Of a DNA stretch of 59,878 nucleotides, positions 52,714 to 57,141 are shown piece after piece (position 1 is the first letter of the stretch; every line of letters starts with the position of its first letter). The stretch spans positions 1 through 59,878 of the forward strand of contig JAAPAO010000158.1 of the NCBI GenBank assembly GCA_013115145.1, written 5' to 3'. Source of the stretch: Perkinsus chesapeaki ATCC PRA-425 (Eukaryota > Protista > Perkinsozoa). A program made the position numbers and the translations under genes. The notes under the pieces are model-generated. The model saw nothing but the letters and a program-made list of their open reading frames with translations, had not been told where the DNA came from and ran no database searches.

Positions 52714-54673
52714 TACCGAATTGGCAACTGCGTCTAATAAGCGATGAACGGTTAAACATAACCACCTGGTAGTAGAGGCTCGCCAACGTTTCAGCCAAAA
52801 GTATTGGCCAGCCTTCCGACAGCCGGATTAGTGCAAGTGTTCCAAAAAGTGATATCGAAAAACTGAACGATCTGTTTTTAAACTGGAACCGCTCATTTTC
52901 TTATTCCCTTCTACTTGTTTCGCCTTACTCAGAAAATTTCATGTTGAAGGTGGCCGGGGTGAATAGGGAATCCTATAGAGTTGTCGGGGAGGACCACTTC
53001 TCGCTCGCCCGCCGTGAATTGGCTTGATCAATCCCAGGTAACGGTTCAGTAACATTTCTGTTGTTGCGACGGCCCCGACGGAAGCTTTTAAACTGTCTGT
53101 AACGTCCTGGAAACTGTAACTGTAATAAGCTCATGAGACCAATGTCATGTACGGTGGCTAGCGTTCACTATGAAGGTCACAACAATCAAATAATGTTACC
53201 CGGAATTCCTAGCAAATCATATATCTGCTTCAATGAACTAGCGCGCGCATCTGCGGCACAATGCCCGTGTGCATGCGTGCAAATATATGTCACGCAATTT
53301 TGCGCCAATTTTCGCCTTGTATGGAGAGTGCTCTTACCTCGCCAACTTGTTCGATTGACCCCACGGAATCTCCACGAGCACGATCATTTAGCCACGATCG
53401 GTATCACACTTCTTATCCTCGCCCTTGGAAATTAATGAGTCTCACTGAGATATTGTTGACAGCCACTTTTTTTAATTTCAACTTGTGCACCATTATCAAT
53501 AGCTGTCGAGGGGTGACATCACAAACGATACTCCATTAAATCGTGCCTGAACTTCCCTCCGATCGCTCTGGAACTCGGAGTACTCCGTCTTGGAATCCGG
53601 CTACACTAAATCAACTTGATTCAATCAAGCCCCCGAAATGAAGTCATTGAAGCCGCTCAATGGCGTTGCTCTCGAGTCGAGAGTCTCGACTTCCAACCCG
53701 CAAGCATCGGAAGTATTGTTCCTTCAAAAGTAAACGATCGCTGCACATCGATATAAATTGTTATGTGCCCGAGAGTTCCCCTCGCGTCCACAAGCAGCGT
53801 CAGCAACGTGACCGATTTGCTCGCTCGCAATAGAACACACGATATAAGATGCGAGAGTTGGTATTCACCCCACAGTAGTGAGGGTCACATTCATGGACCG
53901 CAACATTTATTGGGTACTGTACGTACATATTCAGCAGGCGAGAGTCTGCCGGAGACTGTCTGCGTGAAAATGAGGTAAGAACGCACAGTTTTTGTTAGTC
54001 GGCTCAACGCCTTGTAGCTTCCAGCCTAACAGACAGAGAGAACTGCGAACAGGGAGATACGAAACTTGGTATCATCGGGAGATCTTTTTCGGATGTATTT
54101 GCATACTAACATAAGCTATCCAGCATAGCGCATTCTTCATGAGCCAATCCTGACGCTACTATCGTTAAGGCTGTTTACCTCCTTGAACCACCATCAAATG
54201 AGTTCATTGGTGAGTGCCTCAAGCAGAGAGATGAGATTGTAGCATTCGTTTAGTAACCATTGAAAGTAGTATTGTTGTGTTATAATGTATACGCATGATG
54301 AATTTGACTATGGTGACAAAGGATGATGATAAACTGTATGAGAGATGTACAAACGGATATTTATTAAGGTAGCATACTTTAGATGCTATCTCTGATAACG
54401 TTGTAAATGGCAACTTGTTATTGACTCTCCAGATGGGTCAGAATCCTTACAGTATAAGTGTGTTGACATGATCACGCACTCATTGTAATGAACTCAAACT
54501 AAAAGACTGTGGCTTTGAGAAAGTTAACTGTGACTGTGACAACACTTCCAATTGCCGAATATAAGGCGTTTGTCTCTTCATACGACGCCAACAAATCCCC
54601 CACGTGGGGCCCGGTGCTCATGCACCCGGCCTTCTATGCGGTACCCGGCACATGTAGGCTGGAATAATCTCAT

Positions 54674-54714
54674 AAGGGGGAATTGAAGCGAACACAAGAC
54701 GAAGTGCAGGGGGA
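54674..54714 (+). repeat. Left arm of the 41-bp inverted repeat AAGGGGGAATTGAAGCGAACACAAGACGAAGTGCAGGGGGA
   Basis: Exact reverse complement at 56093-56133. Confidence 0.97.
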
Positions 54715-56092
54715 ATTCCGACAAGGGTTTGGTCCCCCTGTGAGAGAGGTCGTCCGAAGACTACGAGCTGCAGATGAGTTTGCTGCTTTGGACTTGAGTC
54801 GTGCGTTCTATTCATTGGCTTGGCGACCCACCTGTAAGGGTCAACTATGCCGTCCCGGCATACTAATACAAGGCCGGTGGTACTCTATTGCCCGTTTGGC
54901 TATGGGGGCTAGTTGCGCCCCAGTAGCCTTAGCCAGTAGTATTAAAGATGTTATATGTAGGCTCGATCCCGATCATCCCTTTTCTCAGTCGATCCTTACC
55001 ACCAACCTCAGTGTATTCATGGACGATTTGTATGTGTACGGGTCCCAAGCGGACTGCGAGAACTATATAAGATGGTTGGTCCCTCTCCTGCAGCGAGGAG
55101 GCTTCAAAGTCAATGAGAATAAGACGGCTAAGAGTTATGCTATGAAAGTTGGCGAGGAGCTAAGAGTATTAGGGTATGGCTACCGTCGTGGACGTTGCCC
55201 AGAAGAACATATGGTCACTATGGAACGTAATGCATACGAGAAGATTTGCTCAGTGGACCTCGCACACATCAAGACCAGAAGGAACCTATCTAAACTAGCT
55301 GGTTTGGCGTATGACGAGATCGGGGCCTTTGGGCTAGGCTACTCTAAAGGACTCCTGGTCAGTCTAGGAAGCGGACACCACTGGGATGACGAGCTTGACG
55401 TTGGTACGCTCCGCACTGCGAAGAAGATTTGGAACCACATCCTCGAGGCCCTATCTGATGCTAGGAAGAATGGTGCTACGCGATGGTACGTCCCACACGA
55501 TGAACCCCTAAAAGTCTGGACGGATGCCAGTGGATACGGTTGCGGCGCCTGGCTGGAGACCGAAGATGGTACACTGGTAGCTCGCTGGAGTAAGCACTTC
55601 AACAAGAAGGATTCCTATCAGGGCATGCCGAGCAAGGAAGCTATGGGAGCCGCCTGGGCTTTGCGCAAGTGTTTCGAGGATAGCTATAATGTGACACAAT
55701 GGTTAACAGATTCTTCTACGGTGCTAGACGGGTTATCCCGTATGAAAAGAGATCTGACCTTGCACGGTACGCTCATCTTTAAGAGACGGTTGCTAGATGT
55801 TCGAGAAGCTCTAAATGGTATGAACTGTACGATGTATACAAAGGTGGATACGGCTCACAATAAGGCGGATGGTCTATCGCGCGGGTGGTGACACGGGCTA
55901 CCGCGCGCACAAGATATGTGACACAATCACTTTTCGCTCGCCCGACCGTTTCGGATTCTGCATGTTCATCCCACTCATTGCCGCTTAGATTCCGGTGTGG
56001 TCGGAAAGCATCTGTGACCCGAGTAGTTGGATTTGCTCGATGGATGCATCTTCCCTTTTCAGTTATACTTTCCCTCTCGGGTAGTATCTCTC

Positions 56093-56133
56093 TCCCCCTG
56101 CACTTCGTCTTGTGTTCGCTTCAATTCCCCCTT
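56093..56133 (-). repeat. Right arm of the 41-bp inverted repeat
   Basis: TCCCCCTGCACTTCGTCTTGTGTTCGCTTCAATTCCCCCTT on the plus strand. Confidence 0.97.
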
Positions 56134-57141
56134 GGTAGCTATGCCAAAGTCAAAGTAGGCGGTTGAACTGTGGATATCGACGTAGAATGACTGAAATGCC
56201 TCAGGAGGTAAAACGAAACCGAGCACTTGAAGGTTGTTAAGCCTGCTTATGAATCCTTGACGGTCTTTACCAGTCCACTGGGGAAGAAAGCGACCGACGT
56301 AACCTGGAGCGGCTTGAAACTGTAGAGTCGTGTGAACGTTCCCCGCGGTGGTAACCACTCGAAGACTAAGTCGCAATCTAGGGTCTTCAACTGTAAGAGG
56401 CTCTATAATGAAGTACATCTAACCAACATATGTACCACCAACGATGATATGTTGTATGTATCCATACCCATCCCAGGGTTGACCAGCTCCGAGATGGATT
56501 AGCATAATCACCACTGTGAAGGGTAAGGCGAGCTTTTGCAAATTCATTCTATCATACTGAAGTTTCCCACCAAGGGTAGCTTTCACAGGTGTTGTTGTAT
56601 CCACGGCGATGCAACTTGAGGTCAACTCTTAGCTGAAGGAGTTAGATGGTATGCGCAACACGTGATGCGTTGTGTTACGCCACCTGTGTAGCAAGTCAGT
56701 GCATCGCCCAATGCTGCGAACGGGTAGCTGCGAGTCTCTGCACTTACATCCTGTTGTGACGCTCGGCGCGCATCATACTCCGCCATCCACTTGTGGTAGG
56801 AGGTTTTTGGTATTCCTTCTGCTTATGCCCTTTGTAGCTGTACATGAATCGATCTTGTTCGGCCACATGTAGGTACGACTCTTGGCATTCCGGTGCTGTT
56901 GCAGTCGGTCACAGCGCGGCACTTTCAATGCGAATAAGCTGAGTGCGCAGTGCGCATGTGTACGGTGTGCGTCGCAGAGAGAAGATTCGCCGGAACCTTT
57001 AGTCCGTGTTGTTGGTGTGAGGTTTTCATCACCTACACTTCATTATGAGAGAGCCTCATCCTTTTTGAAAACTGCGACTGACGGGTCAGCCTTTTGAATT
57101 TTGAAAATTGAAAGCAAAAAAATCTACTGGTGCTTAGAACG

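What the first reader, a model, noticed from the sequence alone, without database searches (positions are those of the whole stretch)
54618..56547. Intact RT-RNase H cassette with 41-bp terminal inverted repeats and no TSD, inserted inside a secreted-protein gene
Seen: a 41-bp sequence at 54674-54714 recurs exactly inverted at 56093-56133. It brackets a stop-free 402-codon RT-RNase H frame with the catalytic motifs intact (FMDD; TDAS/E/TDS/AD). The host gene's 5' part ends exactly at the right arm (...FDFGIAT) and its tail (EIIPAYMC) resumes exactly at the left arm. No direct duplication is visible at the junctions, and about 22 nt are missing relative to the paralog at 57897-58373 if the two are collinear. 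Knowledge: Bel/Pao elements have direct LTRs and TSDs; DIRS elements have inverted termini and no TSD but carry a tyrosine recombinase. The RT/RH motifs here look Bel/Pao-like. Inference: this is one of (a) a non-autonomous TIR element (Pack-type) that captured a pol fragment, (b) an undescribed inverted-terminus RT element, or (c) retro-cDNA captured at a double-strand break with a fold-back duplication of its first 41 nt. The left arm also supplies the first codons of the RT frame.
Basis: partly seen in the sequence, partly recalled or inferred. Interest (0 to 1): 0.8.

Follow-up and report, generated by a model that had tools for sequence, protein, structure and literature searches.

The report
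Dead retroelement fragment with inverted end
A single broken copy of a rare Perkinsus jumping gene sits inside a decayed gene, and carries a 41-base upside-down copy of its own tail at its front end. This is most likely a scar of how it was copied and pasted into a chromosome break, not the mark of a new kind of transposon.

Summary
The 41-bp perfect inverted repeat (54674-54714 / 56093-56133) is real, and the 41-mer occurs nowhere else in the 41.7-Mb Perkinsus chesapeaki assembly.

**The cassette is not intact.**
- The RT lacks at least 105 N-terminal residues that all relatives have.
- The frame has no ATG before codon 74.

**Which arm is native.**
- The right arm is the outer end of a ~136-bp low-copy unit (56001-56136). 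This unit forms the element's 3' end and has three solo copies elsewhere, 77-84% identical.
- The left arm is a secondary inverted copy of that terminus and replaces a conserved RT motif.

**No family.** There is no TIR family, no target-site duplication and no parent copy. The RT-RNase H is an orphan, at most 33% identical to anything in 1.8 billion proteins. Its nearest kin are Perkinsus gag-RT-RNase H proteins.

**Parallel.** An unrelated repeat family in the same genome ('PcREP') shows the same architecture in 8 of about 21-25 copies: a 5'-truncated body preceded by an inverted copy of its own 3' terminus.

**Best reading (about 0.5).** This is one dead-on-arrival insertion built from two cDNAs that start at the same template end and are joined head to head at a chromosome break. 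About 22-25 bp of target were lost. L1 'dual priming' and Penelope-type inverted insertions are the closest analogues.

The scan had not noted this structure before.

The parts
54674..54714 (+). Left arm: a secondary, inverted copy of the element's 3'-terminal 41 nt. It is fused directly to mid-RT coding sequence.
   Evidence: 100% reverse complement of 56093-56133. It occurs only at this locus. Its translation lacks the conserved D-x-R-x-(Y/F)-N block that relatives have at this position.
54715..55891 (+). 5'-truncated RT (palm and thumb, about 54743-55177), connection region and RNase H (about 55490-55888), ending at the natural stop codon.
   Evidence: RVT_1 at aa 21-165 and RT_RNaseH(_2) at aa 272-330. 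All relatives end at the same ...NKADGLSR C-terminus and extend at least 105 aa further at the N-terminus. Single copy in the genome.
55892..56000 (+). Unique 3' non-coding stretch between the stop codon and the terminal unit.
   Evidence: No other copy in the genome apart from weak similarity in C1665 back to about 55940.
56001..56136 (+). Terminal 'R-unit', a ~136-bp low-copy repeat that forms the 3' end of the insert. It contains the right (native) arm at 56093-56133 plus GGT.
   Evidence: Copies lie at C2893:89447-89574, C376:32187-32093(-) and C1665:~27774-27948, 77-84% identical. All share the end ...CCCCC(C)T(T)GGT. No Rfam match and no supported fold.
56137..56556 (-). 5' part of the interrupted host gene, a member of a small family with hydrophobic N-termini. 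It has an in-frame TAG at 56419-56421.
   Evidence: 36% identical to the paralog over aa 8-147, with 1 TAG inside the match. ORFs listed.
54618..54673 (-). 3' tail of the interrupted host gene (...EIIPAYMC...stop).
   Evidence: ORF 54618-54815. It aligns to the paralog's C-terminus after a 22-nt gap.
57897..58403 (-). Intact paralog, used as a proxy for the uninterrupted gene.
   Evidence: 168-aa ORF. At least 6 further family members lie elsewhere in the genome. No Pfam match.

Best explanation
The 1,463-bp insert (54674-56136) is one dead-on-arrival copy of a nearly extinct, Perkinsus-specific gag-RT-RNase H retroelement.

Both outer ends of the insert are the same physical terminus of that element (...TTCAATTCCCCCTT[GGT]). 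The long arm runs from this terminus back through the 3' non-coding region and RNase H to the middle of RT, where it stops. The short arm is only 41 nt of the same terminus, in the opposite orientation.

This head-to-head layout is what results when DNA synthesis starts twice from the same template end. One route is priming from the two sides of a chromosomal break (dual priming). The other is a strand switch in which the growing cDNA copies the 5' end of a cDNA. The two products are then joined internally, and the junction lies in an AGGGGGA run.

Break repair removed about 22-25 bp of the target gene and left no target-site duplication. The insert has no start codon, lacks the RT fingers and has no partner copies, so it is not mobile.

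Shown: the structure, its uniqueness, the truncation, which arm is native, and the shared terminus. Inferred: that the intermediate was cDNA, and the order and mechanism of joining.
For: - The arms are perfect and the 41-mer is unique in the genome.
- The right arm lies inside a unit whose three other copies end at the same nucleotides, so it marks a physical terminus.
- The left arm abuts RT sequence that is truncated relative to all relatives.
- There is no target-site duplication, and 22 nt are missing against the paralog.
- Other copies of the terminal unit are 3'-anchored fragments of 136-197 nt, as expected for truncated retro-copies.
- In C2893 the unit's 3' end is fused, with 1-nt ambiguity, to a 5'-truncated copy of another repeat. 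This looks like a template jump onto an RNA or DNA end.
- The unrelated PcREP family is 3'-anchored, with about 21 different 5' ends. Eight copies carry an inverted copy of their own 3' terminus (12 to 347 nt) at or near the truncation point, always terminus-outward and without target-site duplications.
- Published analogues exist: L1 twin and dual priming (PMC2837659), and the inverted 5'-truncated copies that flank Penelope-like elements (PMC8557442).
Against: - The RT is of the LTR/DIRS type with an RT_RNaseH domain. Such elements are not known to use target-primed reverse transcription.
- No parent copy exists, so microhomology at the internal junction cannot be checked.
- Two of the three solo terminal units begin at the same position (56001). 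This looks more like a discrete module than random truncation.
- PcREP could instead be a long-TIR DNA element with deletion derivatives. In that case the parallel would be coincidental.
- There is no poly(A) or other RNA 3'-end mark at the terminus.
- This locus is a single case, and there is no read-level support for the assembly.
Confidence: 0.5

Rival explanations
1. It is an internally deleted copy of an element that naturally has inverted terminal repeats (DIRS-like or an undescribed ITR retroelement). On this reading the left arm is what remains of the left ITR after a deletion running from ITR position 41 to mid-RT.
For: - Inverted ends without a target-site duplication fit tyrosine-recombinase retroelements (PMC3266345).
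- Such elements are common in this genome: 22 tyrosine-recombinase hits.
- One of them carries a perfect 34-nt inverted repeat next to a duplicated ~192-nt segment at its 3' end.
- The terminal unit looks like a discrete ~136-bp module.
Against: - The inverted repeat covers only 41 of about 136 nt of the unit.
- The three other units are solo.
- The only other member of the lineage (C411) has no inverted repeats.
- Relatives have gag fused upstream of RT and no recombinase in the protein.
- This RT does not detect the tyrosine-recombinase elements' RTs in its own genome.
- The left arm starts 3 nt inside the unit's end.
Confidence: 0.15
2. It is a DNA-level repair product. A broken chromosome copied about 1.46 kb from a chromosomal or extrachromosomal donor by microhomology-mediated template switching, first 41 nt of one strand and then the other strand. 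No retrotransposition step occurred at this site.
For: - It is a one-off event.
- There is a target deletion and no target-site duplication.
- AGGGGGAATT occurs both at the outer end of the arm and at the arm/RT junction.
Against: - Both arms end within 3 nt of the same terminus, which is also the end of three other copies. This points to a molecule end rather than an arbitrary donor segment.
- No donor is present in the assembly.
- The same polarity recurs in PcREP copies.
Confidence: 0.17
3. It is a non-autonomous TIR DNA transposon (Pack-type or MITE-like) that captured a pol fragment and is moved by a transposase recognising the 41-bp ends.
For: - Perfect terminal inverted repeats.
- A repeat family with inverted ends (PcREP) exists in the genome.
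Against: - There is no second element with these ends.
- There is no target-site duplication.
- The ends are asymmetric: the unit's GGT is present only on the right.
- The arm is simply the outer third of a longer unit whose other copies are solo.
Confidence: 0.06
4. It is an assembly artefact: a chimeric join or mis-oriented segment created at a short inverted repeat.
For: - The assembly is fragmented (3,544 contigs).
- Complex inverted insertions are known to trouble short-read assemblies (PMC8557442).
Against: - Both arms abut the two halves of one gene in the right order and strand.
- Flipping the segment between the arms would give a mirror-image version of the same structure.
- No alternative contig carries an uninterrupted copy of the gene.
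Confidence: 0.05

Closest known systems
L1 twin priming and 'dual priming' insertions (Mob DNA 2010;1:7, PMC2837659)
   Same: A 5'-truncated sense copy is preceded by an inverted copy of the element's own 3' end. Both 3' termini face the flanks and are joined internally at truncated ends. The proposed cause is priming from both strands or ends of the target.
   Different: In L1 the inverted piece in those loci is only the poly(A) tail, and target-site duplications are present. The enzyme there is a non-LTR RT with an endonuclease. Here there is no poly(A), no target-site duplication, a target deletion, and the cargo is an LTR-type RT-RNase H.
Penelope-like element insertion architecture (Mol Biol Evol 2021;38:5005, PMC8557442)
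   Same: An inverted 5'-truncated copy immediately adjacent to the 5' end forms inverted repeats flanking the unit. 5' truncation is frequent.
   Different: Penelope-like RTs are telomerase-like and carry a GIY-YIG endonuclease. Their elements have pseudo-LTRs and often hammerhead ribozymes. Here the RT carries an RT_RNaseH domain, no hammerhead was found, and there is no tandem pseudo-LTR.
DIRS1-like tyrosine-recombinase retrotransposons (PMC3266345)
   Same: Inverted termini, no target-site duplication, and an RT-RNase H related to LTR-type enzymes.
   Different: DIRS1-like elements have ITRs of hundreds of bp plus internal complementary regions, a tyrosine recombinase and a methyltransferase domain. 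None of these is present or detectable here, and the left arm is fused to the middle of RT.
Perkinsus gag(CCHC)-RT-RNase H proteins: P. marinus XP_002774815.1, P. olseni KAF4681073.1 and the decayed copy on P. chesapeaki contig C411
   Same: The same RT-RNase H lineage at 30-34% identity, with the same C-terminus ...NKADGLSR and no protease or integrase in the ORF.
   Different: The window copy keeps the FMDD motif where the P. marinus and P. olseni proteins have YADN. It lacks gag and the RT N-terminus. The termini of these relatives could not be examined.
Pack-MULE-type or MITE cargo-carrying TIR elements
   Same: Short terminal inverted repeats around foreign coding sequence.
   Different: Those elements form families sharing TIRs and make target-site duplications. 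Here there is a single locus, no target-site duplication, and the 'TIR' is a partial copy of the cargo's own end.

Membership tests
Bel/Pao LTR retrotransposon | Direct long terminal repeats flanked by a 4-6 bp target-site duplication | tested here: not met
   There are no direct repeats around the insert, only the 41-bp inverted pair, and no duplication at the junctions.
Bel/Pao LTR retrotransposon | A pol with protease-RT-RNase H-integrase | tested here: not met
   The ORF ends after RNase H, as in all close relatives. No protease or integrase is found in the 715-aa P. olseni relative. Integrase-bearing proteins appear only as distant hits at E about 1e-5.
Bel/Pao LTR retrotransposon | The RT groups with the Bel/Pao clade in a phylogeny | not tested
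   No reference set was available. Only HMMER ranking was done.
DIRS-like tyrosine-recombinase retrotransposon | A tyrosine recombinase ORF | tested here: not met
   There is none in the insert. The PF00589 scan of the genome gave 22 hits, none on this contig.
DIRS-like tyrosine-recombinase retrotransposon | Long ITRs (or split direct repeats) with internal complementary regions | tested here: inconclusive
   Only a 41-bp inverted pair is present, and one arm is fused to mid-RT. No full-length copy exists to examine.
Pack-type / MITE TIR DNA transposon | Several loci sharing the same TIRs | tested here: not met
   The 41-mer occurs only at this locus. Other copies of the unit are solo.
Pack-type / MITE TIR DNA transposon | A target-site duplication | tested here: not met
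   The flanks do not repeat. About 22-25 nt of target are lost instead.
Twin/dual-primed retro-insertion | Both outer ends equal the element's 3' terminus, and the inner ends are truncated and joined head to head | tested here: met
   The same layout is seen in 8 PcREP copies.
Twin/dual-primed retro-insertion | An RNA intermediate and a target-primed RT (endonuclease, poly(A) or target-site duplication) | tested here: not met
   There is no poly(A) and no target-site duplication. The enzyme responsible is unknown, and the RNA intermediate cannot be tested with these tools.

The most novel reading that the evidence does not exclude
Perkinsus harbours an integrase-less gag-RT-RNase H retroelement lineage, together with non-autonomous passengers such as PcREP, that enters chromosomes by break-primed reverse transcription started from the same template end on both sides of the break. 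This would routinely create insertions with terminal inverted duplications of variable length and no target-site duplications. Such an insertion mode has not been described for LTR-type reverse transcriptases.
Probability: 0.15. Interest if true: 0.7.

Novelty: new variant of a known kind. Interest (0 to 1): 0.4.

Why it matters
By itself the locus is a dead fragment in a dead gene. It matters for three reasons.

1. It shows that short perfect 'TIRs' around retroelement pieces in this genome are insertion scars. They are not evidence of a new transposon class, which is useful for annotating Perkinsus and dinoflagellate-lineage genomes.
2. The same head-to-head, terminus-outward layout recurs in an unrelated repeat family. 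This hints at a systematic double-ended cDNA insertion route in an alveolate lineage. On my own knowledge, not tested here, related lineages are known to recycle processed cDNAs into the genome.
3. The RT-RNase H belongs to an almost unsampled, Perkinsus-restricted lineage without protease, integrase or recombinase in its ORF. How that lineage integrates is unknown.

Tried and rejected
**Searches that came back empty**
- Rfam scans of the window (54000-57000) and of six related loci gave no hit and no hammerhead.
- There are no tRNA genes near the insert.
- Folding the terminal unit on both strands, and a consensus fold of its 4 copies, gave no significant structure or covariation (z -1.3 and +0.6). 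I therefore dropped the idea that it is a small structured RNA.
- The sequence search against solved protein structures (PDB) with the ORF found no hit.
- The ESM Atlas returned only generic RT clusters.
- The metagenome scan for the 27%-identical relative P0003 was blank.
- The 3' region of C411 ends in an unrelated repeat and was uninformative.

**Ideas considered and rejected**
In this lineage RT is contiguous with gag in one ORF, so I rejected this.
- I considered whether the terminal unit is an LTR. No polypurine tract precedes it and it has no TG...CA or AATT termini. For comparison, a Gypsy-like element in this genome has a clear AAAAAGGGGG tract and TG...CA ends.
- I noted that ...CCCCCT|TGGT could be a U5/primer-binding-site junction, since TGG is the complement of a tRNA CCA end. 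That would make the shared terminus the 5' end of minus-strand cDNA. Only 4 nt support it, so it remains an untested lead.

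Full report
**Observation**

The arms 54674-54714 and 56093-56133 are 41 nt long, 100% complementary and 1378 nt apart. A perfect inverted 41-mer is far beyond chance in a 6-kb region.

In the window's own assembly (41.7 Mb, 3,544 contigs; the window is contig C641) the 41-mer occurs only at these two places. Between the arms lies a stop-free 402-codon frame at 54683-55891. It matches RVT_1 at aa 21-165 and RT_RNaseH / RT_RNaseH_2 at aa 272-330.

The two halves of a minus-strand gene flank the arms. Joining them and aligning to the paralog at 57897-58403 leaves a 22-nt gap. The junctions carry no direct duplication.

**Organism and kin of the RT**

The annotated product of this frame is KAF4670131.1 of Perkinsus chesapeaki. 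An exhaustive HMMER scan of 1.84 billion representative proteins found only 13 hits at E <= 0.001. The best are:

| Protein | Source | Length | Identity |
|---|---|---|---|
| XP_002774815.1 | P. marinus | 497 aa | 33% |
| P0003 | unnamed metagenome protein | 580 aa | 27% |
| KAF4681073.1 | P. olseni (zinc-knuckle gag fused to RT-RNase H) | 715 aa | about 30% |

The search of 90%-identity clusters found nothing closer.

All relatives end at the same ...NKADGLSR C-terminus, so the stop at 55889-55891 is the natural one. All extend at least 105 residues further at the N-terminus, including a conserved R-x-V-x-D-x-R-x-(Y/F)-N block. More distant hits (E about 1e-5) are integrase-bearing pol proteins, two of them from a sea spider.

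Within the P. chesapeaki assembly the RT body is single copy at the DNA level. The only other member of the lineage is a decayed copy on contig C411, with three stops.

**The cassette is not intact**

- Homology to relatives begins about 20 codons into the frame.
- The residues encoded by the left arm sit where the conserved block should be and do not match it.
- The frame opens at 54668 and has no ATG before codon 74. The GenBank model starts at that codon, which lies after the first catalytic aspartate motif.
- That model also splices a short spurious exon out of the 3' non-coding region.

**Which arm is native**

The right arm is the outer part of a ~136-bp unit at 56001-56136. This unit has three other copies: C2893:89447-89574, C376:32187-32093 (minus strand) and C1665:~27774-27948. 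They are 77-84% identical to the window copy.

All four copies end in ...CCCCC(C)T(T)GGT and then diverge. Two things follow:
- The unit's end is a defined terminus.
- It lies 3 nt beyond the arm (GGT, 56134-56136).

The other copies are solo. No inverted partner lies within the 1.5 kb held on either side of each copy or anywhere else in the genome. The left arm is therefore a secondary inverted copy of the element's own 3' terminus. The arms are identical while the other units are 16-23% diverged. This indicates that the two arms were made in one recent event, and that the lineage is an old resident of the genome.

**A parallel in the same genome**

The C2893 copy of the unit lies inside a 536-bp element of another repeat family, which I call PcREP.

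- About 25 PcREP copies are nearly all anchored at one end (...GGGACACCCTTTA) and start at about 21 different internal positions.
- In seven copies an inverted copy of that same terminus precedes the body, 37 to 347 nt long: C2939, C2921, C3144, C2782, C325, C2251 and C2893. In C2939, C2921 and C3144 it lies within 0-3 nt of the truncation point; in the others it is separated by 17 nt to about 650 nt.
- In an eighth copy, C2296, the inverted piece is only about 12 nt.
- In every case the terminus faces outward, and no target-site duplications are visible.
- In C2893 the unit's 3' end is fused, with 1-nt ambiguity, to a 5'-truncated PcREP body. This pattern resembles a template jump onto a molecule end.

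This is the same layout as at the window locus, in an unrelated sequence.

**Mechanism**

Both ends of the insert are the same physical terminus, facing outward, and two truncated inner ends are joined. The simplest origin is two DNA syntheses that start from the same template end. There are two routes:
- Priming from both sides of a break, which is the 'dual priming' variant proposed for L1 (PMC2837659).
- A strand switch in which the nascent cDNA's 3' end anneals to, and copies, the 5' end of a cDNA.

The junction lies in an AGGGGGA run, and AGGGGGAATT occurs both at the arm's outer end and across the arm/RT junction. This is compatible with microhomology, but it cannot be tested without a parent copy.

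Penelope-like elements routinely show an inverted 5'-truncated copy at their 5' end (PMC8557442), so the layout itself is known. What differs here is the LTR-type RT-RNase H cargo, the absence of a poly(A) tail or target-site duplication, and the loss of target sequence.

The shown steps are the structure, its uniqueness, the truncation, the native arm and the shared terminus. The cDNA nature of the intermediate and the way of joining are inferred.

**Rivals**

| Rival | Confidence | Main weakness or status |
|---|---|---|
| Deleted ITR element | 0.15 | Solo units; no inverted repeats in C411; gag-RT fused in one orientation in relatives |
| DNA-level template switching | 0.17 | Does not explain why both arms stop at a terminus shared by other copies |
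| Pack-type TIR transposon | 0.06 | Fails on family membership and target-site duplication |
| Misassembly | 0.05 | Cannot be excluded without reads |

On misassembly, both arms abut the two halves of one gene in the right order, and no alternative contig holds an uninterrupted copy of that gene.

**The host gene**

The host gene also has an in-frame TAG at 56419-56421, aligned to a sense codon of the paralog. It is a pseudogene regardless of the insertion.

**Limits**

The termini of the P. marinus and P. olseni relatives, and of full tyrosine-recombinase elements, could not be read.
- No RT phylogeny was built.
- Earlier notes of this scan gave the species name and leads on Perkinsus tyrosine-recombinase elements and odd LTR ends. 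None covers this structure.

Noticed in passing
L018:4386-4921 (G000 C2893:89385-89920) and about 25 other loci (C2251, C2939, C2921, C3144, C2782, C325, C2296 and others): 'PcREP' is a non-coding repeat family anchored at one end (...GGGACACCCTTTA), with about 21 different 5' truncation points. Eight copies carry an inverted copy of their own terminus (12-347 nt), and no target-site duplications are seen. Its class (retroposon or long-TIR DNA element) is unresolved.
   Followed up: partly
L067:2139-2828 (G000 C3492:~18616-19305): Downstream of a tyrosine-recombinase retroelement's recombinase gene, a ~192-nt segment occurs twice in direct orientation. Each copy is followed by the same 28-34-nt segment in opposite orientations, giving a perfect 34-nt inverted repeat 430 nt apart. 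It may be the element's terminal or recombination-site structure.
   Followed up: no
window 56419-56421: An in-frame TAG in the interrupted host gene aligns to a sense codon of the paralog. The gene is a pseudogene independently of the insertion.
   Followed up: yes
window 55886-56080: The public gene model KAF4670131.1 starts at codon 74 of the frame. It splices from ...GLSRG into the 3' non-coding unit (tail YTFPLG), which is probably a prediction artefact.
   Followed up: partly
L061 (G000 C411:1-3661): This is the only other member of the RT lineage in the genome: a zinc-knuckle gag ORF, an RT remnant and an RNase H ORF with 3 stops across the match. The contig ends in a 70-bp repeat shared at 97-100% identity with C3188, C177, C2941 and C2870, and at 84% with C2469.
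   Followed up: partly
P0002, P0014 (P. marinus and P. olseni relatives): Their RT motif C reads YADN instead of the usual Y/F-x-D-D, whereas the window copy and P0003 keep FMDD. The catalytic site may have been lost in the better-preserved relatives.
   Followed up: no
window 59080-59454 and 57168-57220: Two further inverted repeats were seen: 40-nt arms at 85% identity, 295 nt apart, and a 26-nt near-perfect palindrome. Short pieces resembling the host gene family (CTTCATTATGA...) also lie on the plus strand at about 57038 and 57791.
   Followed up: no
L052 (C376) and L053 (C1665): Two solo copies of the terminal unit lie roughly 250-330 bp upstream of, and in the same orientation as, an apparent gene start (ATG). 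Any link is untested.
   Followed up: no
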